From NCBI RefSeq assembly GCF_902713615.1, contig NC_052162.1, positions 99,272,559 through 99,336,558 of the forward strand: DNA of 64,000 nt, in the 5' to 3' direction. Under the pieces are notes generated by a model. That model saw nothing but the letters and a program-made list of their open reading frames with translations. It did no database searches and had not been told where the DNA came from. This document shows, piece after piece, positions 27,901 through 64,000 of this stretch. The position numbers and the translations under genes are program-made. Each line of letters starts with the position of its first letter. Positions within the stretch are counted from its first letter, which is position 1. The stretch is from Scyliorhinus canicula (taxonomy: Eukaryota).

Positions 27901-27968
27901 CCTTCGTTAAACTTCACCCTGTTCTCTGTTGTTCTCTTGCTGATGGTGTCTGTCCTCTCCCATGGCAG

Positions 27969-28127
27969 GATAAGTGTATGGATAAACCAGGCCCTCGGCT
28001 TGACAGCAGAACAGAAACCTGCTTTGTGAACTGTGTGGAACGTTTCATCGACACCAGCCAGTTCATCCTCAATCGACTGGAACAGACGCAGAAAAGCAAA
28101 ATGTCACCAGAGAGCCTGAGCGATTGA
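27969..28127 (+). CDS. TIMM8A: TIMM8A exon 2 ([52 protein letters not shown])
   Basis: Acceptor ggcag at 27968; completes the twin CX3C motif (CWDKC...CFVNC); the ESLSD C-terminus is TIMM8A-type; AATAAA at 28351. Confidence 0.96.
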
Positions 28128-30110: not shown

Positions 30111-31041
30111 CTGCAATAATAACCCGTATTGGAGGACAGCACATGGTCCCATTAACCTTTCAGGCTGTAATCTCAGATCATGCTGTGCTGTCGAATGGAG
30201 GTTGTGCTGGGAGGGGTGAATTTTCTGTGGTGTGTCAGGATGAGTATTGACAGCTGCCCATTTGTGACTGCTGGTGTTTGCGATGGGGGAAAATTCAAAC
30301 AATGTATTGACATCTAACCCTTGCGGTGACAGCACTGTCATTTCTCAGAGCTCATTACCACACCCCTGGTATTGGCACATGTTTTCTAAGACTATAACGT
30401 AAGTAGTCAATTTAGCGCATATACTGTCAAAATAGAGTCCTCAGCTGGTGAAAGATGAATAGATTATATTTGTGCTTTGCGGATTAACTAATTATTTTTG
30501 TTATAGTGCATAGTAATAAAACTGGTTTCCTGACCCATTAAGTTTGTATCTGCGATGTAGTATTTTAGAGGTGCGGGGGGTGGGTATCCCAGCTGTGTGC
30601 ACCAGCCCTGCAGCAGCTTATCTGGAGTCTTATACAAGTTTGAATGAGAGGCTCCCGCTAGCAGATCTCTCTACTCCATCCTTTCAAATATTTCGAGAGA
30701 AGGAGCACACTAACTTTTCTGTCAGTACTGGGGAATCGGACACTCTGGGTGCAGTAACTTCCAAATAGGCTGATGTACCTGTATGCGGAAGTTGTGGGCC
30801 AGTCTTCAGTTTACACAGCATCGACTCAAGCTGCAAAGGGATTACACACCAAGACAAAAGGAAGAAGGGAATTTCCAACAGCACATGCTGGTTGGAGGAA
30901 GTAAGTGGACACTTGAACAGGAAGCAGCAATCTCTGGAGCAGCGCTGAACTGGATTTCTGTGGAGCAATGGGAAGTGTTCTGATCTCACTGTACAGCTCG
31001 CACCTCCACAGCGACAGTCCCATTTCCGACCAGCCAAGGCT

Positions 31042-31661
31042 TCAGCTGAAACAACGCATGGTCCCATCTTCACTTGGGTGGATGAGGATTTCAGATGTCT
31101 GGTCTGGCAGAGCTTGGTACTGCTGGCGTCTCATTGCCCCGCTCCACACAGTACCAGGCTCGCCGTTCCTGAGAAATGGGGGCAGGGTACCTGGTGTGAA
31201 GCTGATGTTCTTGAAGGCATGGAGCAGGAAGATCCCAAGGACGATGATGATAAACCCGCTTATGGTGCCCAAGATGTTATCAAAGGTCATGTGGTACCAC
31301 TCCTTGAACAGGATGGCTGAACAGGTCATAACAGCAGTGGTGAAGAAGACGTAATAGATGGGTGTGACGATGGAGGTGTTGAAGATGTCCAAGGCTTTGT
31401 TCAAATAATTGATCTGTGTGCTTACACAAACTATCAGGCACCCAAGCAGGATCCAGGTCACCGGCTGTGCCAGCACACGGTGACCCACAAACAGCTCCTT
31501 GATGGCGATTCCCAGGCCCTTGACACACGAGACAGAGAGGGAGCCGATGACGGAACAGATGAGGATGTAGACCAGGACATTCTTCTGCCCATAACGTGGG
31601 GCCACCAGCACGATTAGGATCAGGCAGCTGCTTACAACACACACTGCAAACACAATAAAAC
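31042..31661 (-). CDS. NIPA2-like magnesium transporter, last coding exon
   Basis: Acceptor ttgcag at 31662; translation [10 protein letters not shown]...[11 protein letters not shown]...[29 protein letters not shown]...LLHAFK is typical of the NIPA2/NIPAL family; stop at 31042. Confidence 0.95.
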
Positions 31662-32497
31662 CTGCAAGCCCGACACAAGACTGAGATTAGACAGTTGAAG
31701 TGATGGCCCTCATGTTTTACAGCACAATGTACAATACATAGGATCACAACACATGCCAGACGATCAACGCCCAAACAAATCCAGCTCGGAATATCCCAAA
31801 CTGCTGAATAGAGCAGTGTGAAACTTTCCACTGGCAGGAGGGCAGGAATCTGGGAATATTGATTCAGGATCATTGGCAGTAGAATCATAGAATCCCTACA
31901 GTGCAGAAGGAGGCCATTTGGCCCTTCGAGTCTGCACTGACTCTTTGAAAGAGCACCCCACCCAGGCCTAATCCCCCACCCTATTCCCATAATACCACCT
32001 AGGGGCAATTAGCATGGCCAATCCACCTTATCTGCACATATTTGCACTGTGGGAGGAAACCGGAGCACCCGGAGGAAACCCACGCAGACACATGGAGAAA
32101 ATGCAAACTCCACACAGTCACCCGAGGTAGGAATTGAACCTGCCTCCCTGGCCACTGTGCCGCCCTGAATATGTGGGAAATGAGGAGAAATGTATTTACT
32201 CAAGTGAGTAATGACTGAGGAAAGCACTGCCTGAGAAAGCAGTGCAAGCAGATTCAATTGTAGCTTTCAAATGGGCTAAATTAGATAAATACTTAGAAAA
32301 ATCTTTCGCTCTCCCAAAGAGGATGCACAGGCTCAAGGGGCTGAAGGGTGCTTCTTTTGTGCTGGGGAAATCAATGATTTTGTGTCATTATGAAAACTTT
32401 CCAGTGAGGAGCTGCACGGTGCAGTAGTTACAGACTGACAGCTATTTAAAGGAGGTATCAGCCCTCCTAACTGCTTTTACTCTGATATTTGCCGTAC

Positions 32498-32658
32498 CTG
32501 GATCTTTGAGCTTTTCCACCATTTCAGTCAAGGTGCCGACCTCGTCCTCTTGTGGAGCATGGATCACCATCACTGTCGAACCCAAAATACTCAGGATGCA
32601 GCCCATCTTTCCGTGTAGGTTCAGGCGTTCGTTTAAAAAATAGGAGGATAAAATCGCA
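32498..32658 (-). CDS. NIPA2-like transporter, 161-nt exon ([40 protein letters not shown]...KLKDP)
   Basis: ctccag acceptor and CAG|gtac donor; phases agree with neighbouring exons. Confidence 0.95.
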
Positions 32659-33409
32659 CTGGAGAGAAGGAAGCAGGGACACTGGATTACCAGGTGCAAG
32701 GGCCCGGCCATACTGGAATTTACAAACACTTCTTCCCACTGCTCCCAATCTGAGAGAAAACCAACTCTACACAACTTGCAGGATGGGAATGAGAGCATTT
32801 TGACATCTGGACACATTTTCCCTTACGTTTTACATCTCCTGCAATCTTCCTATCTTCCTACAAATGACAAGATTTTAAATTGGACCGAACAACATCCACG
32901 GTAGCTTTCGCTATAGAACATAGAACATAGAACAGTACAGCACAGAACAGGCCCTTCGGCCCTCGATGTTGCGCCGAGCAACGACCACCCCACCCAAACC
33001 CACGCAACCCGTAACCCAACAATCCCCCCCCATCAACCTTACACCACGGGCAATTCAGCATGGCCAATCCACCTAACCCTATGTTCTGTGCCAAGGGCTC
33101 ATTCTTTCTCTCAACTTCCAGTGATCTTTTCAAATGTGGAATCGAATGGAAAACGGGCTATTCCAAGATTTTGTAGTTACCAGGCAATTTTCCGAAGGGT
33201 ATGAAACTAATTCAAACTAAAGAAAAGAATCTTTAAATGAAGATGTGATGATGAGAAACTGATAGGACCAACATGTTTCCCGAGATTTGAAGTTAAGATG
33301 CAGCTCCCTCGTTTGCAGATAGTGCAAGGATTGGGTGGTGGAGGGGCTAGTATTTTCTCTTTCAGATTCAGCTCTTATCATTAAAGGAATGGGATCAGTC
33401 TCCCGAATA

Positions 33410-35155
33410 TATCTGTCCTGGGTGTGTATGATGGGGTTAGTGTAGAGGGAGCTTTACTCTGCATCTAACCCTGTGCTATATCTGTCTCAAGATGTTTGAT
33501 GGGGACAGTGCGGAGGGAGCTTTACTCTGTATCTCACCCCGTGCTATACCTGTCCTGGGAGTAATTGGTTTAAACAAAAAGAACAAAGAAAATTACAGCA
33601 CAGGAACAGGCCCTTCGGCTCTCCCAGCCTGCGTTGATCCAGATCCTTTATCTAAACCTGTTGCCTATTTTCCAAGGATTTATTCCCTCTGTTCCCCGCC
33701 CATTCATATATCTGTCTAGATGCCTCTTAAATGATGCTATCGTGCCCGCCTCTACCACCTCCGCTGGCAAAGCGTTCCAGGCACCCACCACCCTCTGCGT
33801 AAAAAACTTTCCACGCACATCTCCCTTAAACTTTCCCCCTCTCACTTTGAAATAGTGGCCGCTTGTAATTGACACTTCACAGTTGCTATCCACACTTCCC
33901 TCAGTAACATGGGATAGATCCCATCCGGACCTGGGGACTTGTCCACCTTAATGCCTGTTGGAATACCCAAAACCTCCCCCTTCCTTATGCCGACATGACC
34001 TAGAATATTTAAACATCCATCATGTCCCTCTCCTTGGTGAATACCGATGCAAAGTACTCATTAAGAAGCTCACTTATTTCCTTTGACTCCACGCATAAAT
34101 TCCCTCTTTTGCTTTGAGTGGGCCAATCCTTTCTCTCGTTACCCTCTTGCTTCTTATATACGAATAAAAGGTTTTGGGATCTTCCTTAACCCTGTTAGCC
34201 AAAGATATTTCATGACCACTTTTAGCCCTCTTTATTGCGCGTTTGAGATTTGTCCTACTTTCCTGATATTCCTCCATAGCTTCATCAGTTTTAAGTCACC
34301 TAGATCTTATGTATGCTTCCTTTTTCATTTTAGCTAGTCTCACAATTCCACCCGTCATCTTGCCATTTCTATCCCTCATTTTCACAGGGACATGTCTGTC
34401 CTGCACTCTAGTCAACCTTTCCTTAAAAGACTCCCACATTTGAAATGTGGATTTACCCTTAAACAGCTGCTCCCATTCCACATTCCCTAGCTCCTGCCGA
34501 ATGTTGTTATACTTGGCCTTTCCCCAATTTAGCACTCCTCCTTTAGGACCACTCTCATCTTTGTTTAGGGGCTGGTTTGCACACCGGGTTAAACAGCTGG
34601 CTTGTAATGCAGAACAATGCCAGCAGCGCGGGTTCAATTCCCGTACCGGCCTCTCCGAACAGGTGCCAGAATGTGGCGGCTAGGGGCTTTTCACAGTAAC
34701 TTCATTGAAGCCGACTTGTGACAATAAGTGATTATTATTATTAATTATTATTTGATGGTGTCAGTATAGAGGGAGTTTTACTCTGTATCTAACCCTGAGC
34801 TGTACCTGTCCTGGGAGTGTTTGATGGGGACAGTGTGGAGGGAGCTTTACTCTGTATCTAACCCCATGGTGTACCTGTCCTGAGAGTGTTTGATGGGGTC
34901 AGTGTAGAGGGGGCTTTACTCTGTATCTAACCCCATGCTGTATCTGTCCTGCTACTGTTGGATGGGAGCAATGTCGACGGATCTTTACTCTGTGTCTAAC
35001 CCTGTGCTATACCTGTCCTGGGAGTGTTTGATGGGGATAGTGTGGACGGAGCTTTACTCTGTATCTAACCCCATGCTTTATCTGTACTGGGACTGTTTGA
35101 TGGGAGCAATGTAGACGGATCTTTACTCTGTATCTAAGCCCATGCTGTATCTGCC
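33410..35155. repeat. About 69-nt satellite array split by a CR1 fragment (33575-34560, -) and a short SINE (34567-34750)
   Basis: Unit gggagtgtttgatggggacagtgtagagggagctttactctgtatctaaccccatgctgtacctgtcct on both flanks of the insertions. Confidence 0.85.
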
Positions 35156-35592
35156 CTCAGTGTTTATAACCAACTTCGAGTACCTGATTGCGGTTCCAGT
35201 CCTGGGTTTGTCTAATATTGTACTCCGAGGTGGAGATGTGAGGAATGGTGTCTGTGTCACAGTGCTTTGGGGGTGAACCGGCATGGGGCGGGGGCAGGTG
35301 GGAGAGAATGAGGAGGAGGAGGAGAGAGAGGAATTTTCCAGTGCTGATTGCACAGCGCCTGCATCTGAAAAATGCACTGACGTGGACCTCAAGATTGGGC
35401 AGTGTCAGGCTGCCTTGATGGCAGAATCACAGTCCTGCAATTTTTGTCTGTGCACACAAAATGGCCATGTGCAAATGGATTGTCTAGTTGCTGGGATCTC
35501 TGGGACTGTAGAGGAGCAGCGAGGCAATTCCTTCAGGTCAGCAAGAGGGAGTTATATTGCAGCTGGAACGGTTATGTCAGGGGCTTGCTCAC

Positions 35593-35683
35593 CTCACAAG
35601 GACACTGAGGGCTCCCAGCGGAGTGACCAGAGTCGCTGGGGCAAAGACATAGGCAGCAAAATTTGCAGCTTCTCCCAAACCCA
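35593..35683 (-). CDS. NIPA2-like transporter, 91-nt exon ([29 protein letters not shown])
   Basis: ttttgcag acceptor, AG|gtgagc donor; NIPA signature [20 protein letters not shown]; absent from the ORF track. Confidence 0.95.
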
Positions 35684-36573
35684 CTGCAAAACAGGATAGA
35701 CAGAGTTAGAGCCTGAACCAGGTGCCCGATGTTCGAGCTACAGTCACCTACAGCCAGAAAAAGTATAACCATTTCACAAAGTGGGACACAACCTGCAGCC
35801 CTACTGCATTATAAAGGGTAGCGAGACACTGAGGTGAGGCAATGGGGGGAGATGAGAAGGAAGACACGGGCGGGGGTGGTGGTGTGATAAAGCAGGGAGA
35901 CACAACGATCTTACAAATCCCCACTGAGAGAAATATGAACTTCCAGGATGATACAAGATTCCACATTTTAAGACTTTTACTTTAATAAGCAAACTAAAAA
36001 CAATTGACTAAACACTATTTTTATTTCTCCTTTAAACTTTGGAACAGCACTTTCCTATTTTATTTTTAGAACAACTGAATAAATCACTTCACATGTCTAC
36101 CTTACACTGTCTCTTAAGTAGACATTCAATTTTCCTGGACCCAATCCAGAGATTTGTAGCTCCCGAGATTCTACTTCCATTTTTGTCCTTTCTTAGCCTG
36201 CTAACTTTTAACTCCAGAACTGTCTTGCGCAGTGAGGGTTTTTCTTGTCGATTCTCCCTCTATCACAAGCTAGGCAATCTTCCAGCCTTGTTACAAATCG
36301 TCATGACATTGGTGTTTTCAATCCAAGCACGAGGTCCCTCCCTCATTCCTGCACAGGAAATCTGACACTATCTGCCTCTAGCTACTCTCTCTCACCCGAT
36401 CATGGCAATCTGCTTCTCTGAGAATTTCAGGGATATCTTCGAAACCCTTTCCTTCTCAAAGACATCTTCATGGCAACATGAATCAAATGGGCGTTGTATC
36501 CAGGTAGAAATGCTTAATGCCTAACTTTGAGACCTCATCTCTTTAATCTTGGAAGTAAATGGACAGTTTAAAG

Positions 36574-36959
36574 CAGGGGTGGGCAAACTTTTCCGTGCAA
36601 GGGCCACATTCAGAAATTCACAATTCACAAAGGGCCGCATAGTATATTAAGTAAAATAATTACTTCACCCGGTTATGATTCTGGGCGCCTCATATAGAAC
36701 ATAGAACAGTACAGCACAGAACAGGCCCTTCGGCCCTCGACGTTGTGCCGAGCAATGATCACCCTACTCAAGTCAACGTATCCACCCTATACCAGTAAGT
36801 AACCCAACAGCCCCCCCCCCATTAACCTTAAAAAAAAAAAAAAAAAAAAAATTTTTTTTTAAAAAAGATTTTTTTTTTTTTTTTTAATGACTTGGTGGGC
36901 CGCAGAAATACCTTTGGCGGGCCGCATGCGGCCCGCGGGCCGTAGTTTGCCCACCCCTG
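36574..36959. mobile_element. Non-autonomous hAT element (MITE), copy 2
   Basis: Same TIRs; 8-bp TSD gtttaaag (36566-36573 and 36960-36967). Confidence 0.92.
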
Positions 36960-37749
36960 GTTTAAAGCATTACTGTTTACAACCTGACATTCCCAACTTC
37001 TTTCTTTCATTCTCCCTGTGGCTACATGGGTTTCCTCCGAGTCCTCCGGTTTGCTCCCACAGTCCAATGGGAGGTTAGATGAATTGGCCGTGTTAAATTA
37101 TCTCTTAGTATCCAAAGATGTGCAGGTTAGGTGGAGCTACAGGGATAGGGCAGGGTGCTCTTTCAGAAGGTTGGTGCAGACTTGCTGGGCCGAATGGCCT
37201 CCTGCATTGTAAGGATTCTATGATCTTGGAACTTTGGAGACTAGCAGTCTCATCACTGTAAACACAGATACTGCTGCCATTGACTCAAGATGTGAATACC
37301 TTAAATCTTGGTTTCAATGACCGGTGTCTCTCATTAATCTTTAAAAGCCATGCAATCCAGACCTGTTGTTAGGTAGCGTTCAGAACAGGAGAAACACTTA
37401 ATTTTATCCGACATTAAAGACACAGTCATAAAACATACAAATAGGAGGTTTATAAGATTGTTAACATGGGGGAGGTAGAAGGAGGGAGACATTGAGCAGG
37501 GGAAAAAAACAGGGTGACAATGGGGGAGAGGAGAGGCAGTGAGACACTGGGGGGGGGGGGGGGGCGGAGAACATAAGGGATTCAAGAAGGTGGCAGGAGG
37601 GAAGCAGCAGTGAGACACCAGGGTGGGGAAGCGGGTAGAAATGGAGGCGGGGAGCGAAGCAGGGGACATGGGGGAAGAGAGTGGGGCATCAGGGAGAAGC
37701 CGAGGCCCCGAGGGGAAGGAGAAGCAAGGCGTCATGCGGGTGGGATGAA

Positions 37750-40030
37750 GAAGCAGTGGGTCACTGGGGGATTCAGTGGGAAGCAGTGGGGTCACTGGGA
37801 TTCAGTGGGAAGCAGCGAGGTCACTGGGATTCAGTGGGAAGCAGAGGGTCACTGGGAGAATGAGTGAAGCAGGGGATCACTGGAGTATGGGTGAAGTTGG
37901 GGATCACTGGGGTATGGGTGAAGCACGGGGTCACTGGGGTATGGGTGAAGCACGGGGTCACTGGGGTATGGGTGAAGCACGGGGTCACTGGGGTATGGGT
38001 TAAGCACGGGGTCACTGGGGTATGGGTGAAGCAGGGGATCACTGGAGTATGGGCGATGCAGGGGATCACAGGAATATGGGTGATGCAGGGGGTCACAGGA
38101 GTATGGGTGAAGCAGGGGATCACTGGAGTATGGCCGACGTTGGGGATCACTGGGGTATAGGTGAAGCACGGGCCACTGGGGTATGGGTGAAGCAGGGGAT
38201 CACTGAAGTATGGGTGAAGTTGGGGATCACTGGGGTATAGGTGAAGTTGGGGATCACTGGGGTATAGGTGAAGCACGGGGTCTCTGGGGTATGGGTGAAG
38301 CAGGGGGTCTCTGGGGTATGGGTGAAGCAGGGGATCACTGCGGGAATGGGTGCAGCAGGGGATCACTGGGGGAATGGGTGAAGCAGGGGATCACTGGAGT
38401 ATGGGTGAAGCGGGGGATCACTGGGGGAATGGATGAAGCGGGGATCATTGGGGTATAGGTGAAGCAGGGTATCACTCGGGGAATGGGTGAAGCAGGGGAT
38501 CACTGGAGTATGGGTGAAGCGGGGGATCACTGGAGTATTGGTGAAGCAGGGGATCACTGGAGTATGGGTGAAGCGGGGGATCACTGGGGGAATGGATGAA
38601 GCGGGGATCACTGGGGTATAGGTGAAGCAGGGTTTCACTGGAGGAATGGGTGGAGCAGGGGTCCACTTGGGGAATGGGTGAAGCGGGGGGCCACTGGGGG
38701 AATGGGTGAAGCAGGGATCACTGGGGTATAGGTGAAGCACGGGGTCACTGGGGTATGGGTGAAGCAGGGGATCACTGGGGGAATGGGTGAAGCCGGGATC
38801 ACTGGAGTATGGGTGAAGCAGGGGATCACTGGAGTATGGGTGAAGAAGGGGATCACTGGAGTATGGGTGAAGCAGGGGATCACTGGGGGAATGCGTGAAG
38901 CAGGGGATCACTGGGGGAATGGGTGAAGCCGGGATCACTGGAGTACGGGTGAAGTTGGGGATCACGGGGGGGAATGGGTGAAGTAGGAGATCACTGAGGG
39001 AATGGGTGAAGTAGGGGATCACTGGGGGAATGGGTGAAGTAGAGGATCACAGGGGGAATGGGTGAAGCAGGGGATCACTGGAGTATGGGTGAAGCAGGGG
39101 ATCACTGGAGTATTGGTGAAGCAGGGGATCACTGGGGGAATGGGTGAAGCAGGGGATCACTCGGGGAATGGGTGAAGCAGGGGATCACTGGGGGAATGCG
39201 TGAAGCAGGGGATCACTGGGGGAATGGGTGAAGCAGGGGAACACTGGCGTATGGGTGAAGCAGGGGATCACTGGAGTATGGGTGAAGCAGGGGATCACTG
39301 GAGTATGGGTGAAGCGGGGGATCACTGGGGAAATGGATGAAGCGGGGATCACTGGGGTATAGGTGAAGCAGCGTTTCACTGGAGGAATGGGTGAACCAGG
39401 GGATCACTGGGGGAATGGGTGAAGCAGGGGTCCACTTGGGGAATGGGTGAAGCGGGGGGCCACTGGGGGAATGGGTGAAGCAGGGGACCACTGGGGGAAT
39501 GGGTGAAGCAGGGATCACTGGGGTATAGGTGAAGCACGGGGTCACTGGGGGAATGCGTGAAGCAGGGGATCACTGGGGGAATGGGTGAAGCAGGGGATCA
39601 CTGGAGTATGGGTGAAGTTGGGGATCACTGGAGTATGGGTGATATTGGGGATCACTGGAGAATGGGTGAAGTTGGGGATCACTGGGGGAATGGGTGAAGT
39701 TGGGGATCACTGGGGGAATGGGTGAAGTTGGGGATCACTGGGGGAATGGGTGAAGTTGGGGATCACAGGGGGAATGGGTGCAGTTGGGGATCACAGGGGG
39801 AATGGGTGACGTTGGGGATCACAGGGGGAATGGGTGACGTTGGGGATCACTGGGGGAATGGGTGAAGCAGGGGATCATTGGGGGAATGGGTGAAGCCGGG
39901 ATCACTGGAGGAATGGATGAAGCAGCGTATCACTGGGGGAATGGGTGAAGCAGGGTATCACTGGGGGAATGGGTGAAGCAGGGATCACTGTGGGAATGGG
40001 TGAAGCAGGGGATCACTGGGGGATGGGGGA
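37750..40030. repeat. 27-nt G-rich tandem minisatellite, roughly 85 copies, in a NIPA intron
   Basis: Unit tgggtgaagcaggggatcactgg(ag/gg)(t/g)a; 9-aa periodicity in the ORF track. Confidence 0.97.
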
Positions 40031-40237
40031 CAGGAGAAGCAGGGGGCCACTGGTGGGGGGGGGGATTAAGTGGGAAACCAGGTTGTTGTATATCGAGGCA
40101 GAATGTGGGAGACGCCATAATGAGCAGTAATTTGCTGTATCTCCTGTGATGTTCCTCAGCGCTGCCATAGCCAATAGGAGAAATTTACAAGAAAGCATTT
40201 TAAAGTTATTCTACCTGTTACCATGAGCAACACTCAC

Positions 40238-40294
40238 TTGTGAGCAGTCCGGCCCACCACAGCCATTCCTTCAGGTATGCATGGCCACCCTGAC
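40238..40294 (-). CDS. NIPA2-like transporter, 57-nt exon ([19 protein letters not shown])
   Basis: ctcacag acceptor, A|gtgagt donor; NIPA signature [14 protein letters not shown]. Confidence 0.95.
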
Positions 40295-40508
40295 CTGTGA
40301 GGGGAGAACAAAGCACATTGAGCCGTACAGCCTGACAGCTTCTATCACTATCTCCCCATCCAGTTCGCTGCCTAACCTCACCAGCTGTGTAAGCTGGTGA
40401 ATAAGGGATCTGATGGGTAATGGTGTCTCGTGTGTAATTTCCCTGTGTGAAACATCAACTTCCAGTTTCAACTTGTTTGTCAAACTTGGCAACAGTGAAT
40501 TAGTAGCG

Positions 40509-41276
40509 ATTACAAGGTGAGGGAACTGTATTTGGAGGAAGGGTTCGCCAGTCTGGAGGAGCTAAGGGGGAGGGTAGAGCTGCCGAGGTGGAGTGAGTTC
40601 AGGTATCTGCAGGTTAGGGACTTTGAGCGAAAGGTCTGGAGGGGGTTCCCTAGGTTGCTGGGATACACCTTGCTGGAGCGACTGCTGCTTCTGGATGTGG
40701 AAGGGAGGGAAGAATTGGGGATATATATACAAGTGGTTGCGGGAGCAGGGAGGCGAGCAAGTGGTGAAGATCAAAGAGAAATGGGAAGCGGAGTTGGGAG
40801 AGGAGATCAATTGGGGAGAATGGAATGAGGCACTGGGTAGGGTAAACGGGACCTCCTCATGTGCAAGGATGAGCCTGATACAGTTTAAGGGGGTGCACAG
40901 GTTGCATATGACTCGGGCGAGAATGAGTCGGTTCTTTCAGAGAGTAGTAGGTGAGTGTGAGAGGTCTGGGCGGGGGCCAGCGAATCATGCGCACATGTTT
41001 TGGGGTTGAGAAAAATTGGGAAGATTCTGGGCGGGGGATGCTCGCAGTCTTAGCCAGGATAGTGGAGGATCCGGACCCTTTGGTGGTGATATTTGGGGTC
41101 TCAGAGAAGCCAGAGCTCATGGAGAAGAGGAAGGCCGATGTCTTGGCCTTCGCCTCTCTGACTGCACGGGCGAATTTTGCTGGAGTAGGGGTCGGCATCG
41201 TCCCAGAAGGTAGCTTCTGTTTGTTCACTGTAACGTGTTTTGATACATGTTTGTAATAAAAACATTTTTAAAAAAA
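40509..41276 (+). mobile_element. 5'-truncated L1-clade LINE (ORF2 C-terminal region)
   Basis: KEKWEAELG...SLIQFK..HRLH...C...HAHMFW zinc-knuckle-like region; AATAAA plus A-tail; 12-bp TSD gaattagtagcg (40497-40508, 41277-41288). Confidence 0.88.
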
Positions 41277-41899
41277 GAATTAGTAGCGTTTAACTTCAAA
41301 TTATCACCAACTCTTGAAAGGCTCAGGTCGTGTCCACCGCTGTGGCACAGCTGCTGGGGTGAGCATGTGGGGAGGGGCACAGAGTCACAGGTGTCAGGGG
41401 ATTGGCACTATGAGTGCTGAGGTATGGCATTTTTAAATTTGAATAAAACATCTCAAGAATGAATAAGCCAGTGAAAAGGGACTTTCTGTATTCATATCAG
41501 AAAGGAAAGGCTCAGATTTAGTCATTACCTTGTGCTGAGGTGCATCAATTCAGGACTGCAATTAGAGGCAGTACAATGTTTACGGTGCAGGACTCAGGAT
41601 TAATGAATCAGATTAAATTGCTGTTCCTCATCAGAATCCATTGCTGATTAATGACTGAGCTCAGCTGGACAAGGCATTGGTGAGATCAAATTTAATAACT
41701 TGCCAAATTTAATCATGAAGAGAGGTCATTTGGGTGTGGTAGCAGGGGTCCTATCTCCATCAGGGAGGGTCACGTTTTGGGGAGGGGGAGGGCCTCCTTT
41801 GGTGAGGGGGGCCACCTTCGGGGGGGGAGGGGGGGGGGCTATCTGGGGAGGGGTCACCAGGGTGGGGGAGGGCCACATTCGTGGAGAGGAGAGCCACCT

Positions 41900-43765
41900 T
41901 TTTCATCTGTATTCACACAGGAAAAAGACAATGTTGTCGAGGAGAATACTGAGATACAGGCTACTAGACTAGAAGGGTTTGAGGTTCATAAGGAGGAGGT
42001 GTTAGCGATTCTGGAAAGTGTGAAAATAGATAAGTCCCCTGGGCCGGATGGGATTTAGCCTAGGATTCACTGGGAAGCTAGGGAGGAGATTGCTGAGCCT
42101 TTGGCTTTGATCTTCAGATCATCTTTGTCTACAGGAATAGTGCCAGAAGACTGGAGGATAGCAAATGTTGTCCCCTTGTTCAAGAAGGGGAGTGGAGATA
42201 ACCCCGGTAACTATAGACCAGTGAGCCTTACTTCTGTTGTGGGAAAAGTCTTGGAAAGGTTTATAAGGGTTAGGATGTATAATCATCTGGAAAGGAATAA
42301 TCTGATTAGAGATAGTTAACATGGTTTTGTGAAGGGTAGGTCGTGCCTCACAAACCTTATTGAGTTCTTCGAGAAGGTGACCAAACAGGTGGATGAGGGT
42401 AAATCAGTTGATGTGGTGTATATGGATTTCAGTAATGCGTTTGATAAGGTTCCCCACGGTAGGCTATTGCAAAAAATACAGAGGCATGGGATTCAGGGTG
42501 ATTTAGCAGTTTGGATCAGAAATTGGCTAGCTGATAGAAGACAAAGGATGGTGGTTGATGGGAAATGTTCAGACTGGTGTCCAGTTACTAGTGGTGTACC
42601 ACAAGGATCTGTTTTGGGGCCGCTGCTGTTTGTCATTTTTATAAATGACCTGGAGGAAGGCGTAGAAGGATGGGTGAGTAAATTTGCAGATGACACTAAA
42701 GTCGGTGGAGTTGTGGACAGTGCAAAAGGATGTTACAAGTTACAGAGGGACATAGATAAGATGCAGAGCTGGGCTGACAGGTGGCAAATGGAGTTTAATG
42801 CAGAAAAGTGTGAGGTGATTCATTTTGGAAGGAATAACAGGAAGACAGAGTACTGGGCTAATGGTAAGATTCTTGGTAGTGTGGACGAGCAGAGAGATCT
42901 CAGTGTCCATGTCCATAGATCCCTGAAAGTTGCCACCCAGGTTGAGAGGGTTGTTAAGAAGGCGTACGGTGTGTTAGCTTTTATTGGTAGAGGAATTGAG
43001 TTTCGGAGCCATGAGGTCATGTTGCAGTTGTACAAAACTCTGGTGCGGCCGCATTTGGAGTGTTGCGTGCACTTCTGGTCGCTGCATTACAGGAAGGATG
43101 TGGAAGCATTGAAAATGAAATTAAATGAAAATTGCTTATTGTCACGAGTAGGCTTCAATGAAGTTACTGTGAAAAGCCCCTAGTCGCCACATTCCGGCGC
43201 CTGTCCGGGGAGGCTGGTACGGGAATCGAACTGTGCTGCTGGCCTGCCTTGGTCTGGTTTTAAAAGCCAGCGATTTAGCGGAGTGAGCTAAACCTGCCCC
43301 TAAAATTGGAAAGGGTACAGAAGAGAAAAGAGTTGCCTGGTATGGCGGGAAGATCTTACGAGGAAAGGCTGAAGGACTTGAGGCTGTTTTCGTTAGAGAG
43401 AAGAAGGTTAAGAGGTGACTTAATTGAGGCATACAAGATGATCAGAGGATTAGATAGGGTGGACATTGAGAGTCTTTTTCCTCGGATGGTGATGTCCAGC
43501 ACGAGGGGACATAGCTTTAAATTGAGGGGAGATAGATATAGGACAGATGTCAGAGGTAGATTCTTTACTCAGAGAGTAGTAAGGGCATGGAATGCCCTGC
43601 CTGCAACAGTAGTGGACTCGCCAACACTAAACGCATTCAAATGGTCATTGGATAGGCATATGGACGATAAGGGAATAGTGTAGATGGGCTTTAGAGGAGT
43701 TTCACAGGTCGGTGCAACATCGAGGGCCGAAGGGCCTGTACTGCGCTGTAATGTTCTATGTTTCA
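41900..43765 (+). mobile_element. CR1 LINE ORF2 (RT) fragment, same family as 14697-15676, interrupted by a short SINE at about 43110-43300
   Basis: KSPGPDG, NYRPVSLTS, DFSNAFDKVPH, GVPQGSVLGPLLF, KFADDTK motifs; CR1 tail. Confidence 0.95.
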
Positions 43766-43769
43766 GGGA

Positions 43770-44450
43770 TGTGGACGGCCAATATCGGGGAGGGGGAAGG
43801 GCAGGGCCACCTTCAGGGAGGGGACCGAGAGGCAGGAAGGTGGAGGTCCACCTTGGGGGAGGAGGAGGGGAGGTCACCTTGGGGGAGGGGCGGTGGAGGG
43901 ACATCTTCGGAGAGGAAGGTGCAGGGCCACCTTTGGGGAGGGCCAGGGCCACCTTTGGTGAATGGTAGAGCAGGAGGCCACCTTCGGGCAATGGATGGCC
44001 ATCTTCAGGGAGGGGAGAGCCACCTTTGGGAAGGGGAGGGCCACCTTCGAGGAGGGATATGGCCATCTTTGGGAAGGGGAGGGCCATCTTCGGGGAGGGG
44101 AGGGGGGGGGCATGTTCGGGGAGGAAGAGGGTCACCTTCTGGGAGGGGAGGCCCACATTTGGGGGAGGGGGCAATGCGGGGCTACATTCAGGGAGGGGGA
44201 CACATTTGAGGAGGAGGGCCACCTTCAGGAATGGGGCCAGCTTCGGGAAAGGGAGACCACCTTCGTTGGGGCAGGGGCACTTTCAGGGAGTGTGGGGGCA
44301 CCCTCTGGGAGTGGAGGATCATGTTTGAGGAGGGAAAGGGATTTCATCTTCAGGGAGGAGAGGGGGCCACCTTCTGGAAGGGAAGAGGCACAGGGGAACC
44401 ACCTTCAGAGGTTGGGGGGGGGGGGGGGGCATCTTCGGGGAAGGCACGAT
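43770..44450. repeat. G-rich degenerate minisatellite (ggccaccttcggggagggga); remnants at 41750-41900, 45340-45570, 48895-48970
   Basis: Recurrent ggccacctt motif. Confidence 0.8.
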
Positions 44451-44454
44451 GATA

Positions 44455-44882
44455 AGTAAAAAGAGGTAAGGTGTTGAATGAATATTTCACATCTGTCTTC
44501 ACCCAAGAGAATGAGGAGGTAGATAGAGAGAGACTGTGAAGTTCTTGAGCCCATTGTCAATAGAGAGTGACAAGGTTTTGAATGTCTTGGCGGACTTGTC
44601 CATTTGCAGATGATTTGTGTCCCAGGATGCTGTGGGAGGCGAGGGAGGAGTTTGCAGGAGGTCTGACTCAAATATTTAATTGCTCTCTGGCCACAGAGGA
44701 GATGCCAGAGGAGTGGAGAACAGCTAATGTGCTCTCACTATTTAACAAAGGTTGTAGAGATAAGTCAGGGAACTACAGGCCAGTGAATCTCACACCAGTG
44801 ATCGGGAAACTACTGGAGCAAATTCTGAAGAAGAGAATCTATCTCCACGTAGAGAGGCGCGAGAGAGAGAGGTGAGAGAGAG

Positions 44883-44926
<44 letters not shown>

Positions 44927-45335
44927 ATCACTATGTTTGTGGATGACACAAAGATTAGCCGGATGGCTAACAGTGAGGTAAAGTGTCTTGTGTTACAGGA
45001 AGATATAAATCGGATCATTAAATGGACAGAAAATGGGCAAAGTGTGAGGTGCTCCACTTTAGAAGTCGTGATGTGACAAGAATGTATTCAATGAATGGCC
45101 TGATACTGGGACGTTCTGAGGAACAAAGGCTTCTTTGTCCATAGATCTCTTGAAGGCAGAAGGGCAGGTTAATAGGCTGCTGAAAAAGGCATATGGGGCA
45201 CTTGCTTTTATCAATCAGGGCATAGATTACAAAAGCAGGGTGTTCATGCTGGAGCTGTACAGAACTTTGGTGAGGCCACAGCTGGAGTACTGTGTACAGT
45301 TTTGGTCACCACGTTATAGGGAGGATGTGATTGGA
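44455..45335 (+). mobile_element. Decayed CR1 fragments with a (GA)n microsatellite at about 44860-44922
   Basis: NYRPVNLT and YRTLVRPQLEYCVQFWSP motifs. Confidence 0.8.
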
Positions 45336-46764
45336 CTTTCGCAAGAAGGTGGGACATCTTCGGGGGGGGGGTGGGGGGGGGGAGAAGAGGCGGTAAAGAG
45401 TCACCTTCGAAGAGAGGGAAGGGGAGGTGGAGGGCCACCTCGGCAGCTTCGGGGAGGGGGAGCCAGCACCTTCTGGGGTTTGGGGTGAGTCAACACCTTC
45501 AGGGGAGGGGGCGCTCAGCACTTTCAGGGAAGACGAGAGACAGTCGGCACCTTCAGAGTAGGGGGTAAACGGACTGAAGGAAAATACTGTTAGCATGGAC
45601 TCAAAGCGATACGCCCACTCCTGGCTGACATGGTCCCATTCAGACTTAAACTCATCAGGGAACGCAGAGGGTGATTCACCCACGATCCACTATCTTTCGG
45701 GATATTCCTCATTGGCCAATCATTATCCTAGTACAGAGTCTGAGCACATATTTTTCCATCAATGGAAGATTAGTTGTATATGAATGGCCTAGCTCAGGTC
45801 TTTATGTAAATGGGAGTGGGCAATCAAGCAGCACAATTATTTTTATTTTATTTTTTATTTTAATCGCTTATTGTCACAAGTAGGCTTCAAAATGAAGTTA
45901 CTGTGAAAAGCCCCTAATCGCCACATTCCGGCGCCTGTTCGGGGAGGCTGGTACGGGAATTGAACCGTGCTGCTGGCCTGCTTGGTCTGCTTTCAAAGCC
46001 AGCACTTAGTTGATAAGTTCCAGTCTGGACATTCTAGAGGAGGATCTTTGTTTGAAGGGCTGGGCAGGGCTTCGAGAGAGAAGAAATTAATTTGGAGCGG
46101 CAAAGAAAAAAGAAGATGCGAGCAGCCATGAGACAAGTCATGAAGTCTGCTACACAAAATAAGGATCTAAGCAGCCATCGAAGAGGTCATGGAAAAAAAC
46201 CATAGACAGAAGGCTTTGGAAAAGAGTTCTGAATGAATGTCCCGACCAGAAGAAAGATTGCTTCAGAAATGCAAGTGGTGCTTTTGGCTGTATATGTAAG
46301 TGGAACGAGAGCTGTATTTTCATGCCAAGTGTTATTTGATGAGAACTAGTAAGAAACTAGCACAGATGAATGCGTGCCTTAAGAGTCGGATGTGTAACTT
46401 TTTAAAGGTTTAAGACGGTGCAGAAAAATCGATTTGTTCCGGTTGTGATAATATAAGAAATAGGGCCTGGTTATTCTATAAACAAACAGGAGGGAAGGTT
46501 TTAGATTCCTAGACCATTGGGACCGTTTTGGGGAAGGTGGGACCTGTACAAGCGGGATGGTCGACATCTTAACCAGAGAGGGACTAACATCCTTGCTGGT
46601 GGGTTCGCTAGTGCTGTTGGGAAGAGTTAATCTGTTAGTTTGAAGTTTAAAACTTTAAATGTTTTTTTTTGGTTTAATAACGTTTGTTTAGAAAATAACC
46701 AAACTCTATTTATTACATTGTCACAGCCGAAATGAATCAAATTTTCTGCACCATCTGGTTCAAT

Positions 46765-48600
46765 AGGGGACCCCAGAGTCATGGGCACAGGTAGACGCTT
46801 TTGTGGTCATGAAAATGACTCCAGGATGGTGTGATGCCTCCTTGATGTCGGGGTCTGGGATATCACCGAACGGTTGCAGGGCACCCTGAAGAGGGAGAGT
46901 GATAAGCCAGAGGTCATGGTACATGTTGGTACCAACGACATAGGTTGAAAGAAGGATGAGGTTTTGCATCAATAATTCAAGGAGTTAGGCAATAGACTAA
47001 AGAGCAGGACCTCTCGGGTTGTAATCTCTGGATTACTCCCAGTGCCACATGCTAGTGAGTACAGGAATAGGAGACTAGCACAGATGAATGCGTGGCTTAA
47101 GAGTCGGATGTGTAACTTTTTTAAGGTTTAATACGGTGCAGAAAAATCAATTTGTTCCGGTTGTGATAATATAAGAAATAGGGCTTGATTATTCTATAAA
47201 CAAACAGGAGGGAGGTTTTTAGATTCCTGGACCATTGGGACCGTTTTGGGGAAGGTGGGACCTGTACACGCGGGATGGTCGACATCTTAACCAGAGAGGG
47301 ACTAACATCCTTGCTGGTGGGTTTGCTGTTGGGAAAAGTTAAACTAGTTTGGCAGGCGGAGGGGATGCAGACTGATTGCAGAATATGGACACAGTATAAC
47401 ATAGAAAAGCAATCAGGTTAGAGGGAATACAGCGGTAGTAAGTTTCAAAGGAGTAAGACAAGGCTGGATGGCCTCTACTTTAATGCCAGGAGTATTAAAG
47501 GTAAATGGATGAGTTAAGGGTGATGATTGACACATGGAATCATGATATAATAGCTATCACAGAGCTATGGTTGATTCAGGGGCAGGATTGGCAGCTTAAC
47601 AGCCGGGATATAGAATCTTCAGGCAAGGCAGAGACGGGGATAGAAGAGGAGGAGGCATTGCATTGTTAGTTCAGGAGGAGTTACTATGGTAAGGAGAGCT
47701 GATATCTTGAAGGGGACATCAAATTAAGCTGTGGTAGAGCTTAGGAATAAAAAAGGAACAGCTACGTTGCTCGGAGTTTATTATAGACCCCCAGAAGCTG
47801 CACGGTGGCACAGTGGGTTAGCCCTGCTGCCTCACGGCACCGAGGTCCCAGGTTCGATCCTGGCTCTGGATCACTGTCCGTGTGGAGTTTGCACATTCTC
47901 TTCCCAACAGCGCTAGCGACCCACCAGCAAGGATGTTAGTCCCTCTCTGGTTCAGATGTAGACTGTCCCGCTTGTCCAGGTCTCACCTTCCCCAAATTCA
48001 GTCCCAAAGGTCCAGGAATCTAAAGCCCTCCCTCCTGTTTGTTTATAAAATCACCAAGCCCTATTTCTTACATTATCACAACCGGAACAAATCGATTTTT
48101 CTGCACCGTCTTATACCTTAAAAATTTTATTTCTTGTTTCGGCCCCACAACTCAAAGATGTGCAGGTTCGGTGGATTGGCCACGCTAAATTTCCCCTTAA
48201 TTGAAAAAAGTGAATTGGGTACTCTAAATTTATTTTAAAAAAACTATAGACCCCAGATAGTCAGTGGGAAAGTTGGAGCAAATATTTGCGCAATAAAAAG
48301 AGGGTTATTAATAATAATCTTTATTATTGTCACAAGTAGGCTTACAATAACACTAAAGTTACTGTGAAAATCCCTTATTTACCAATATTAGGTGATTTTA
48401 ACTTTCCCAAAATTAATTGGGATACCCATTCATGTTAAGGGCTTAAATAGAGTATGCTTCTTAAAATATATACAGGAAAACTTTACAAGTCAATACATAG
48501 AGTCCAACAAGGGACGGTGCAGTGCTGGACCTAATTTTGGGGAATGAAGTCAGACAGGCAGTTAATGTGTTGGTGGGGGAGCATTTTGGTGATAGCGACC
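46765..48600 (+). mobile_element. Decayed CR1 ORF1 (esterase-like)/endonuclease region with SINE and templated insertions
   Basis: gtggtacatgttggtaccaacgac-like (VHVGTND), gtaatctctggattactccc (VISGLLP) and GVYYRPP motifs. Confidence 0.75.
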
Positions 48601-49267
48601 ACGACAAAGAGCAAAATAGCATAGGAACAGGCCCTTCGACCCTCTAAGCCTGTACCGGTCATGATACCAATCCTTGCCAAATCCCTCAGAACTTCCTTGT
48701 GCAGTATCCATCCTATCCATGTATTTGTCAAGATGCCCTTTTGAACGGTGTTTATGTATCTGCTTCCACAACCTTGCCTGGCAAAGCGTTCCAGGCACTC
48801 ACCACCTTCTGCGTAAAAAACCTGCCTCGCACATCTCCTCTAAACTATGCCCCACAGACCTTAAACCTATGATCCCCGGCGACTGCCCCTCCGCACTGGA
48901 GAGTGAGAGTCAGCACCTTCAGGGGAGAGAGAGTCAGCACCTTTGTGTAAGGGGAGCAGTGAGGGGAAAAAGCAGTGTTCTATCAACAAATAAGCATTTT
49001 ACTACCTAGCCCTTTGTGGGGGTCTAGTGATGCAATGTCCCTGTAATAGATTATCTAAATTCACAGGATTATGGAATGGCCTTGTGTGGCAGAGTACCAG
49101 GGAATTGGTTCCTATGATCTGATCGAGGGGATGGGTCAGTGCCAGTGTGCTGGGAAAGGGAAGTACTGAAGGTGAAAATGAAAATCAGGTCGTTCATCTT
49201 TAAAAACTGAGACTGAGATCAGTGACTGTTAGTCAGGTCACTGTATGTTCCCTCAGCGGTAACCTAC

Positions 49268-49441
49268 CTGCTCTGATCACCCCCTTGCCGGACAGACGTA
49301 ACAGCCCCTTCTTTTTCAGGATGAAACTACTTCCGATGAAGATGCTGGAGCTGATGGCGAGAGCAAGCCCGACGTAGAAATGATAGCCCAAAGCGGCATT
49401 GGCCACGGTGGATTGCTGCAGGAAATAAGGACATGGGGTCA
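49268..49441 (-). CDS. NIPA2-like transporter exon ([57 protein letters not shown])
   Basis: Donor G|gtaggt at 49268/49267; tandem AAG/CAG acceptor (exon start 49444 or 49441); NIPA TM1 motif [22 protein letters not shown]. Confidence 0.9.
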
Positions 49442-51030
49442 CTGCTTTCAGAATATACACAGGGGGAAACCCAAAGTCACTCAGCATCACAGAGATGCCT
49501 CAAGTAGCGAATATCTTGCTTGTGGGTGATGGTGTGTGTGTGTGAGAGAGAGATCTGTATTTGTGTGGAAAAGGACTGGAGCCAAGTCTGTAATAAAGTC
49601 AGGAGCTGAGTGGCCTTGGTGGAAACCAAACTGAGTGTCAGTGAGCAGATTATTGCTGAGTGTGCAGCTTGATAGCACTATTGCTAACCCCTTCCATCAT
49701 TTTACTCATGACTGAGAGTAGACTGATCAGGTAGTAATTGGCTGGGTTGTATTTGTCCTATTTCTTATGTACAAGACATATCTGGGCAATTTCCCACATT
49801 GCCGGGTAGATGTCAGTCTTGTAGCTGTACTAGAACAGCTTGGCTCGGGGCACGGCAAGTTCTGGAGCACAAGTATTGTCAGAATATTGTCAGGGTCCCT
49901 AGCCTTTGCAGTAACCAGTACCTTCTGCCGTTTCTTAATCACGTGGATTAAATTGAGTTAGTTGAAGAATGGCATCTATGATGCTGGGGACCTTCAGAGG
50001 AGACCAAGTTAGATCATCCACTTGACACTTCTGCCTGAAGATTGTTGCAAATGCTTCAGCCTTATCTTCTTCATCAATGAGGATGGGGTTATTTGTGGAG
50101 CTAGTAAGTTGTTTAATTTTCCACCGCCATTCACGACTGGATGGCACAATGGTTAGCACTGCTGTTTCAAAGCACCAAGAAACCGGGTTCAATTCTCCCC
50201 TCAGTTGTCTATGTGGAGTTTGCACTTTCACCCCATGACTGCATGGGTTTCCTCTGGATGCTCATTTTGTCCGATAGTACAAAGATTTGTGGGTCTGTCC
50301 TGTCGGTGGGACAGGGCATACCCATGGATGGTCATTGTGGTATAAGGGAATATCATATCATCTGTAATGAGTGTGACTACGTCAGGCTGTTGCTTGGCAT
50401 TATCTGTGACAGCTCTCTGAAGTCTGGCACATGCCCCCAGGTGTTAGTAAGGAGGTCTTCACAGGTCTGGGTATGGCACTGTCATTTCTGGTTGTGCCAG
50501 GTGATCCATCCAGTTTAATAGCAGCTTGATACAACTGAATGGCTTGCTGGACCATTTAAGAGTCAACCACAGTGGGTCTCGAGTCACATGTAGGCCAGCC
50601 CAAGTAAGGACAGCAGATTTCCTACTTAGCCACAGGGTAATTACAACAGTTGACAATTTCAATTCCAAATTTATTAATTGATTCCATGAGCTGCAAAGTG
50701 GGATTTGAACTCATGTTTCCAGAACATTAACCTGGGCCTCTGGATTGCTTGTCAAGTGGCATTACTATTACACTACCATCTCCACTATGAACCTACAGTT
50801 CACAATGTGTTCTATGGAGATTCTTTGGATAAAAGTGAACAGAAACATATTTTAATGTCAAAACCAACCAAACGATCAGAAACCACAAGGGAGGAATTGC
50901 AGAGCAGCAGGAGATCACACCATGATTAATGCCTTAGAGGTTAGAATTTGAAAGCCTCTGGTCAATACCCAGGAATGCAAAAGCTTGAATATTAAGTACC
51001 GGTGCAGTTATCTATTCTAGAGTCACCTAC

Positions 51031-51082
51031 CAAGGGTGAAGTGGAAGACATTCTCCAGGCTGCAGATAATTGTCACCAGCAT
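51031..51082 (-). CDS. Probable first coding exon of the NIPA2-like gene (MLVTIICSLENVFHFTL)
   Basis: ATG at 51082 with an upstream in-frame stop; phase-1 donor G|gtaggt matches the phase the next exon needs; no recognisable homology, so tentative. Confidence 0.45.
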
Positions 51083-63902: not shown

Positions 63903-64000
63903 GTGTGGTTATCCCTTATTTATAACAATATAAATTTGGATCAGAAGTGACAGCAATGAACAAGTAGTCCGTATCTAAAGGGCAAGTGACTATTTGTTTC

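What the first reader, a model, noticed from the sequence alone, without database searches (positions are those of the whole stretch)
31042..51082. Intact NIPA2-like gene between TIMM8A and TAF7L: candidate fourth 2R ohnolog of the Tec-kinase/NIPA paralogon
Seen: a phase-consistent multi-exon NIPA gene (about 384 aa, no stops) inside the BTK-TIMM8A-TAF7L block. Established: in human, NIPA2 is at 15q11 with CYFIP1, NIPAL1 at 4p12 next to TXK/TEC, and NIPAL4 at 5q33 near ITK/CYFIP2; I know of no NIPA gene at the Xq22 BTK locus. Inference: this is not NIPA2 itself but the BTK-linked ohnolog, kept in sharks and lost in mammals. It would probably be auto-annotated as NIPA2, leaving a distinct vertebrate Mg2+ transporter lineage uncharacterised.
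Basis: partly seen in the sequence, partly recalled or inferred. Interest (0 to 1): 0.75.

Follow-up and report, generated by a model that had tools for sequence, protein, structure and literature searches.

The report
BTK-linked seventh NIPA magnesium transporter gene
This catshark gene is an intact, expressed copy of an unnamed NIPA2-like magnesium-transporter gene that sits beside BTK and TIMM8A in sharks, fishes, birds, platypus and marsupials, was not found in placental mammals, and is labelled plain "NIPA2" in databases.

Summary
On the minus strand, six GT-AG coding exons (51051 to 31042) encode 365 aa, not about 384. They match exactly the protein annotated as "NIPA2 isoform X1" of Scyliorhinus canicula. 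Contigs from four studies carry two of its splice junctions.

The gene lies between TIMM8A and the genome's only detected TAF7-type gene, about 120 kb from BTK. The same genome has a separate CYFIP–NIPA2–NIPA1 block, a TEC-linked NIPAL1-type gene and an ITK/CYFIP-linked NIPAL4-position gene.

In an ML tree the window gene falls in a strongly supported clade (100/99) distinct from true NIPA2. That clade holds sharks, a ray, bichir, bowfin, gar, teleosts (zgc:101583), coelacanth, lungfish, caecilians, salamanders, reptiles, birds, platypus and six marsupials. An AU test rejects a shark-only duplication (p = 5e-5). Gar, a bird, tilapia, platypus and a possum keep the same neighbours.

"Kept in sharks, lost in mammals" is too narrow: I found no copy only in placentals and, tentatively, frogs. 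All Mg2+-site residues of human NIPA2 are invariant in the clade, so the mechanism is probably the same. Origin in the 2R genome duplication is inferred, not shown. I found no paper on the lineage and no earlier scan note on this locus. Interest is moderate.

The parts
51031..51051 (-). Coding exon 1 (ATG plus 7 codons, donor GT)
   Evidence: It matches the N-terminus of annotated P0001. It was not covered by the stretch laid with reads.
49268..49415 (-). Coding exon 2 (helix 1 region, PF05653 positions 2-40)
40238..40294 (-). Coding exon 3 (57 nt)
35593..35683 (-). Coding exon 4 (holds site residues E80 and N83, which are human E70 and N73)
   Evidence: The junction 32658/35593 is present in contigs of 4 runs.
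32498..32658 (-). Coding exon 5
   Evidence: Both of its junctions are present in contigs of 4 runs.
31042..31661 (-). Coding exon 6, coding part with stop codon (helices 5-9 and C-terminal tail)
   Evidence: Contigs run through it without a break.
30400..31041 (-). 3' untranslated region (at least this far; the contigs go on about 400 nt beyond 30400)
   Evidence: table 8: the records continue unbroken from 31659 down to 30400 and beyond
12494..28124 (+). TIMM8A (exons 12494-12598 and 27966-28124), convergent neighbour 3 kb from the NIPA stop codon
58730..63956 (+). TAF7-type gene (exons 58730-58807, 60964-61062, 63768-63905 and onward past the window end), divergent neighbour

Best explanation
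The window holds the catshark ortholog of an unnamed seventh lineage of the vertebrate NIPA/SLC57 family. It is the sister of NIPA2 and is fixed between TIMM8A and TAF7, next to BTK. Elsewhere it is annotated as zgc:101583, 'NIPA2-like' or simply 'NIPA2'. The lineage arose before sharks and bony vertebrates split, most likely as the BTK-block counterpart of the CYFIP1-NIPA2-NIPA1 block in the second vertebrate genome duplication. Every sampled jawed-vertebrate group keeps it except placental mammals and, tentatively, frogs. The protein most likely works as human NIPA2 does: a dimeric nine-helix DMT-fold carrier that passes hydrated Mg2+ (and possibly nucleotides) down its gradient by alternating access. 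Shown here: the gene structure, two splice junctions in transcript-like contigs, the separate orthogroup, the conserved neighbours and the conserved site residues. Inferred: transport activity, the 2R origin and the placental loss.
For: Gene model: an exact GT-AG six-exon model equals P0001. Contigs of four runs from four studies join exons 6-5-4 at exactly these junctions.
Own genome: five NIPA1/2/L1/L4-type loci. C14 carries CYFIP(+) 21.18-21.32 Mb, NIPA2(-) 21.336-21.348 Mb and NIPA1(-) 21.453 Mb. C4 carries a NIPA gene, CYFIP and ITK. C3 carries TEC and a NIPAL1-type gene. C17 carries BTK, TIMM8A, this gene and TAF7. All five loci share intron positions.
Tree: in the careful IQ-TREE of 82 rows, the window clade has 33 rows with support 100/99. 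The NIPA2 clade, which holds mouse and catshark C14A, has 89/96. The two are sisters at 87/76. With marsupials, squamates and salamanders added, the window clade has 50 rows and SH-aLRT 99. The AU test rejects one chondrichthyan clade (lnL lower by 84.8, p = 5e-5).
Synteny elsewhere: gar TAF7-NIPA-TIMM8-BTK, platypus TAF7-NIPA-TIMM8 (41), possum the same (44), gannet TAF7-NIPA-TIMM8-BTK (45), tilapia NIPA-TIMM8-BTK (46). Bowfin true NIPA2 lies between NIPA1 and CYFIP (81).
Mechanism: the protein aligns without gaps to solved human NIPA2 9Z6N, residues 8-319, E = 2e-155. E70, N73, G89, S92, S192, Q232, Y252, Y253, F256 and K197 (PMC13500462) are invariant or nearly so across the 50 clade members.
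Against: The NIPA2 + window-clade sister node has only moderate support (87/76).
NIPA1 sits on a very long branch and is probably misplaced, so its relation to the pair is unresolved.
No Tec kinase was found near the catshark NIPA2 block, and BMX could not be located. The four-fold symmetry is therefore incomplete.
Absence in placentals and frogs rests on truncated hit lists and on the six-member human SLC57 list (PMC9333335), not on genome searches.
The runs are only guessed to be RNA.
Transport was not assayed. One dimer-interface residue (human D278) and one hinge glycine (G26) are not kept in this clade.
Confidence: 0.8

Rival explanations
1. The lineage is old and distinct, but it arose by a small-scale or segmental duplication in the jawed-vertebrate stem (or earlier), not by the 2R genome duplication.
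For: There is no Tec kinase beside the NIPA2/NIPA1/CYFIP block and no CYFIP beside BTK. Only one TAF7-type locus was found, so TAF7 gives no paralogy signal. The lamprey sequence sits on a long branch, so its position is unsure.
Against: Three of the four NIPA loci are linked to three different Tec kinases, and two to the two CYFIP genes. That is what block or genome duplication followed by gene loss predicts. The split predates the shark/bony-vertebrate divergence, and in the tree it follows the lamprey branch (92/88).
Confidence: 0.14
2. It is a shark-specific duplicate of NIPA2, or NIPA2 itself moved to a new place.
For: It is annotated as NIPA2 and is 72% identical to the catshark C14 NIPA2.
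Against: A separate NIPA2 sits beside CYFIP and NIPA1 on C14. The AU test gives p = 5e-5 against a chondrichthyan-only clade. Orthologs occupy the same interval in gar, tilapia, a bird, platypus and a possum.
Confidence: 0.01
3. It is a decaying or silent copy with no function.
For: None beyond the lack of a direct assay. The runs are only guessed to be RNA.
Against: The frame is open and all introns are GT-AG. It is 92% identical to Mustelus and 75% to coelacanth. The site residues are invariant in 50 species. Intron-skipping contigs occur in four studies.
Confidence: 0.01

Closest known systems
Human NIPA2 (SLC57A2; cryo-EM structures 9Z6N, 9Z7R, 9Z7T; PMC13500462)
   Same: They align without gaps over human residues 8-319 (E = 2e-155). 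The window protein is 68% identical to mouse NIPA2. All Mg2+ site 1 and site 2 residues, the K197 bridge, the H111/H129/F299 interface residues and an acidic 4-5 loop patch are kept. The intron positions match those of catshark NIPA2.
   Different: It is a separate clade at a different locus: BTK/TIMM8A/TAF7 rather than CYFIP1/NIPA1. Clade-wide substitutions are A190S, I178V, T183L and L261M. D278 becomes N, G or S. G26 is variable and is S in catshark. The C-terminal tail is unrelated.
zgc:101583 / 'magnesium transporter NIPA2-like' gene models of gar, teleosts, coelacanth, birds, reptiles, platypus and marsupials
   Same: Same clade and same neighbours. The window gene is their catshark ortholog.
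   Different: Only the label differs. NCBI calls the catshark, gar and tilapia genes 'NIPA2' and calls others 'NIPA2-like'. I found no paper that describes the lineage.
NIPAL1 (NIPA3) and the NIPAL4-position gene
   Same: Same family and same exon structure. They are 61-62% identical to the window protein. Each is linked to a Tec kinase: TEC on C3, and ITK plus CYFIP on C4.
   Different: They fall outside the NIPA2 + window-clade pair in the tree. The C4 gene is called NIPAL4-type by position only, because no named NIPAL4 sequence was in the set.
NIPA1 (SLC57A1)
   Same: Same family. It is the tandem neighbour of NIPA2 in catshark and bowfin.
   Different: About 44% identical in the last exon. 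It sits on a very long branch whose placement is unreliable.

Membership tests
NIPA / SLC57 (Pfam PF05653 Mg_trans_NIPA, DMT superfamily) | Pfam Mg_trans_NIPA match above the curated cut-off over the whole domain | tested here: met
   the exons cover profile positions 2-294 and the last exon alone scores 192.9 bits against a cut-off of 26.2. P0001 carries PF05653.
NIPA / SLC57 (Pfam PF05653 Mg_trans_NIPA, DMT superfamily) | Collinear with the solved nine-helix NIPA2 protomer | tested here: met
   gap-free alignment of residues 18-329 to 9Z6N residues 8-319, E = 2e-155. No structure was predicted.
NIPA / SLC57 (Pfam PF05653 Mg_trans_NIPA, DMT superfamily) | Mg2+ site residues E70, N73, G89, S92, S192, Q232, Y252, Y253, F256 (PMC13500462) | tested here: met
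   all are present in the window protein. Across the 50 clade members all are invariant except S92, which is kept in 48.
NIPA / SLC57 (Pfam PF05653 Mg_trans_NIPA, DMT superfamily) | Measured Mg2+ transport | not testable with these tools
   This needs a liposome or cell flux assay.
NIPA2 orthogroup (SLC57A2) | Groups with human/mouse NIPA2 to the exclusion of other paralogs | tested here: not met
   it falls in the sister clade (100/99). Catshark C14A is the sequence that groups with mouse NIPA2. AU test.
NIPA2 orthogroup (SLC57A2) | Lies beside CYFIP1 and NIPA1 | tested here: not met
   that block is on C14 at 21.18-21.46 Mb, whereas the window is on C17.
BTK-linked NIPA2-like orthogroup (zgc:101583) | Clade membership with gar, teleost, coelacanth, bird, platypus and marsupial 'NIPA2-like' genes | tested here: met
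BTK-linked NIPA2-like orthogroup (zgc:101583) | Position between TIMM8A and TAF7, on the opposite strand, with BTK beyond TIMM8A | tested here: met
   Window. Other species.
2R ohnolog | Duplication node older than the shark/bony-vertebrate split and younger than the invertebrate outgroups | tested here: met
   both clades hold chondrichthyans and osteichthyans, and the mollusc, insect and nematode sequences (named) fall outside.
2R ohnolog | Timing relative to cyclostomes | tested here: inconclusive
   Lamprey 'NIPA2-like' falls outside the pair (92/88), but on a long branch that is joined to another long branch.
2R ohnolog | Paralogous neighbours on the sister blocks | tested here: inconclusive
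   Tec kinases sit beside 3 of the 4 blocks and CYFIP beside 2 of 4. Nothing is shared directly between the C17 and C14 blocks, and BMX was not located.
2R ohnolog | Chromosome-scale paralogon assignment | not tested
   This needs genome-wide ohnolog or ancestral-linkage-group mapping.

The most novel reading that the evidence does not exclude
A seventh, unnamed SLC57/NIPA transporter is the fourth, BTK-block member of the NIPA / Tec-kinase / CYFIP paralogon. It was kept for over 400 million years in every jawed-vertebrate group, including monotremes and marsupials. It was deleted once on the placental stem, and independently in frogs. Its altered dimer-interface and hinge residues point to a sub-function that placentals do without or have handed to NIPA2.
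Probability: 0.6. Interest if true: 0.45.

Novelty: new member of a known kind. Interest (0 to 1): 0.38.

Why it matters
Orthology labels. NCBI names both catshark genes, both gar genes and many teleost genes "NIPA2". Comparative or expression studies can therefore mix two genes that split before sharks and bony fishes did.

Disease models. Zebrafish work on the human 15q11.2 deletion knocks out nipa1 and nipa2 (bioRxiv 10.64898/2026.02.17.706411). Fishes carry this extra NIPA2-like gene, with identical Mg2+-site residues, and humans lack it. It is an obvious candidate for compensation.

Evolution. The gene supplies a NIPA member for the BTK block, the one Tec-kinase-linked block that has none in human. 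It is also a clean case of a gene kept in monotremes and marsupials but not found in placentals.

This kind of finding is fairly common, so it is useful rather than surprising.

Tried and rejected
- BMX. I tried to place a fourth Tec kinase near the NIPA2 block. The BTK-motif exon at C14:158.397 Mb, and the one on C13, match no Tec kinase specifically (best 36.8 bits). From memory they look like GAP1-type RasGAP PH/BTK exons. Weak motif exons on C12 and C1 were inconclusive against PDB. BMX therefore remains unplaced.
- BTK in the window. Gar BTK 3' exon pieces found nothing in the window except reverse-transcriptase repeats.
- NIPA1 placement. NIPA1 fell outside the invertebrates on a branch of length 3.4. 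I treat this as long-branch attraction and drew no conclusion. Its first two coding exons were not found in the 40 kb fetched.
- Representative search. It gave mostly invertebrate, plant-like or fungal-like clusters and few vertebrate paralogs. It served only for outgroups, named.
- Naming the C4 gene as NIPAL4. No named NIPAL4 sequence turned up, so it is called that by position only.
- Literature. Searches for zgc:101583, NIPA2-like, NIPA2+ohnolog and NIPA2+TIMM8A+BTK found nothing on this lineage.
- Earlier scan notes. There were none on this locus.
- Exact-protein look-ups failed for gar NIPA2, the coelacanth copy and Podarcis.
Full report
**What is there**

The window is G000:C17:99272559-99336558 of a 4.22-Gb genome. 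The best protein hit identifies the genome as Scyliorhinus canicula.

ORFs on the minus strand between 31042 and 49490 match Pfam PF05653 (Mg_trans_NIPA) at 192.9, 65.5 and 42.4 bits. The database protein P0001 has 365 aa and is annotated "magnesium transporter NIPA2 isoform X1 [S. canicula]". It is 100% identical to the last exon and maps to collinear exons.

Enumerating GT/AG boundaries gives one model that translates exactly to P0001. Its exons are 51051-51031, 49415-49268, 40294-40238, 35683-35593, 32658-32498 and 31661-31042.

The length is 365 aa, not about 384. The difference is at the N-terminus, where an in-frame extension of exon 2 exists.

**Expression**

Eighteen public runs from seven studies hold the last exon. 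I laid contigs from four runs, each from a different study, on 30400-36000. In each run one contig of 1.6-2.6 kb:
- runs unbroken through the 3' UTR and exon 6;
- skips 31661 to 32498, and 32658 to 35593;
- shows CT..AC ends on the plus strand, which is GT..AG on the gene's strand.

The two longest contigs then continue about 670 nt further upstream, past exon 4. The runs are only guessed to be RNA. Still, intron-skipping contigs at exactly the predicted junctions are what spliced mRNA gives. Exons 1-3 were outside the stretch laid.

**Neighbours in the window**

- TIMM8A exons lie at 12494-12598 and 27966-28124 (+). The gene ends 3 kb from the NIPA stop codon.
- TAF7-type exons lie at 58730-58807, 60964-61062 and 63768-63905 (+).
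- No BTK exon was found in the window. Its PH/BTK-motif exon is at C17:99182384 and matches BTK best in PDB (57.9 bits, against 42 for ITK).

**The rest of the family in this genome**

PF05653 finds seven loci. Five are of the NIPA1/2/L1/L4 type and share the same intron positions.

| Contig | Content |
|---|---|
| C14 | CYFIP (+, 21.18-21.32 Mb); a NIPA gene (-, 21.336-21.348 Mb) whose last exon is 94% identical to Chiloscyllium NIPA2 and 73% to mouse NIPA2; a divergent NIPA1-type gene (-, 21.453 Mb) |
| C4 | a NIPA gene (227.51-227.54 Mb), CYFIP (227.58-227.62 Mb), and a BTK-motif exon that matches ITK best |
| C3 | a BTK-motif exon that matches TEC best (124.11 Mb), and a NIPA gene (124.35-124.37 Mb) that groups with named NIPA3/NIPAL1 |
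| C17 | BTK, TIMM8A, the window gene, TAF7 |

**Phylogeny**

The set had 82 rows: named hits, the four other catshark paralogs stitched from their exons, and mollusc, insect, nematode and lamprey outgroups (named). The method was IQ-TREE with LG+C20+F+G4 PMSF, reporting ultrafast bootstrap / SH-aLRT.

- The window clade has 33 rows and support 100/99. It contains six sharks and a manta; bichir, bowfin, gar and teleosts (UniProt "Zgc:101583"); coelacanth and lungfish; caecilians and axolotl; tuatara, turtle, birds and platypus.
- The clade with mouse NIPA2 and catshark C14A has 28 rows and support 89/96. It also spans chimaera to mammals.
- The two clades are sisters (87/76), and lamprey lies outside them (92/88, on a long branch).
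- Forcing all chondrichthyan sequences of both kinds into one clade costs 84.8 lnL units and is rejected (AU p = 5e-5).

A search with the platypus protein added six marsupials, many squamates, salamanders and turtles. It found no placental and no frog. In the 86-row quick tree these all fall inside the window clade (50 rows, SH-aLRT 99), in roughly species-tree order.

**Synteny in other species**

| Species | Order of genes |
|---|---|
| Gar | TAF7 - NIPA - TIMM8 - BTK |
| Platypus | TAF7 - NIPA - TIMM8 |
| Brushtail possum | TAF7 - NIPA - TIMM8 |
| Gannet | TAF7 - NIPA - TIMM8 - BTK |
| Tilapia | NIPA - TIMM8 - BTK |

In each case the strand pattern matches the window. Bowfin true NIPA2 lies between a NIPA1-type gene and CYFIP. 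A zebrafish preprint states that tubgcp5, cyfip1, nipa1 and nipa2 are syntenic there (10.64898/2026.02.17.706411).

The gene is ancestral to jawed vertebrates.

**Where it was not found**

- The human SLC57 family is listed with six members: NIPA1, NIPA2 and NIPAL1-4 (PMC9333335).
- No placental sequence appears among the platypus query's best 120 hits outside true NIPA2, whereas six marsupials do.
- No frog appears in the clade either, although frog NIPA2 is found.

These are absences from truncated lists, not genome searches. Loss in placentals is likely. Loss in frogs is tentative.

**How it probably works**

The protein aligns without a gap to solved human NIPA2 (9Z6N), with window residue = human residue + 10. 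That study shows:
- a dimer of nine-helix protomers;
- two hydrated Mg2+ sites, formed by E70, S192 and Q232, and by F28, N73, G89, S92, Y252, Y253 and F256;
- loss of transport in the E70A, Q232A and F256A mutants;
- passive Mg2+ and nucleotide transport (PMC13500462).

All of these residues are present in the window protein. Across the 50 clade members they are invariant, apart from S92, which two sequences lack. The same holds for K197, H111, H129, K145, F268 and E270. I infer the same carrier mechanism.

Differences that hold across the clade:
- A190S, I178V, T183L and L261M.
- Loss of the interface aspartate D278, which becomes N, G or S.
- K or R at position 147, where NIPA2 has G, V or A.
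- A relaxed hinge glycine G26, which is S in catshark.

Their meaning is unknown.

**Origin**

Three of the four NIPA blocks carry different Tec kinases: BTK, TEC and ITK. Two carry the two CYFIP genes. The split predates the shark/bony-vertebrate divergence. This fits block duplication in the vertebrate genome duplications followed by losses.

From memory, the human counterparts (4p12, 5q33, 15q11, Xq) belong to the same four-fold paralogon as the GABA-A receptor clusters. I did not test that.

Weak points:
- Nothing is shared directly between the C17 and C14 blocks.
- BMX was not located.
- NIPA1 is misplaced on a long branch.
- The lamprey placement is unsure.

I give the 2R origin about 0.7, given a distinct old lineage. 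The distinct old lineage itself I put at about 0.97.

**Novelty and verdict**

Gene models of this lineage exist in many genomes under three different labels. I found no paper that treats it and no earlier scan note on it.

It is a new, unnamed member of a known family, not a new kind of system. Its value lies in correct orthology, in paralog compensation in fish models of 15q11.2 genes, and as a tidy case of a gene that placentals appear to have lost.

Noticed in passing
window 37838-40027: A minisatellite of 80 copies with a 27-28-nt unit (87% matches) fills much of intron 3 of the NIPA gene. It explains the GC peak (0.58) and strong GC skew (0.60) at 38-40 kb, and the many repetitive ORFs on both strands.
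   Followed up: partly
window 42329-43183 (+); also 14702-14758 and 23985-24053: There is a reverse-transcriptase ORF (RVT_1, 89.6 bits) of a LINE-like element in intron 2. Further RT fragments lie inside the TIMM8A intron.
   Followed up: partly
G000:C4:227515648-227516220 (L018, L019): The NIPAL4-position paralog has its exon 4 twice, about 350 bp apart and in inverted orientation. Which copy is spliced was not examined.
   Followed up: no
G000:C17:99336311-99336514 (window 63753-63956): Only one TAF7-family locus was detected in the whole genome. The search gives only a lower bound.
   Followed up: no
P0405-P0409, P0414 (teleost 'NIPA2-like', 540-593 aa): Long teleost gene models of this clade carry a partial extra NIPA stretch in front of a full domain. 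They may be fused tandem copies or model errors.
   Followed up: partly
G000:C14:158397087-158397173 and G000:C13:136385301-136385384 (L045, L047): These PH-plus-BTK-motif exons match no Tec kinase specifically. From memory they look like GAP1-type RasGAP genes.
   Followed up: partly
window 31022: All four runs read G where the assembly has A, 20 nt past the stop codon in the 3' UTR. This is probably an allele of the sequenced individual.
   Followed up: no
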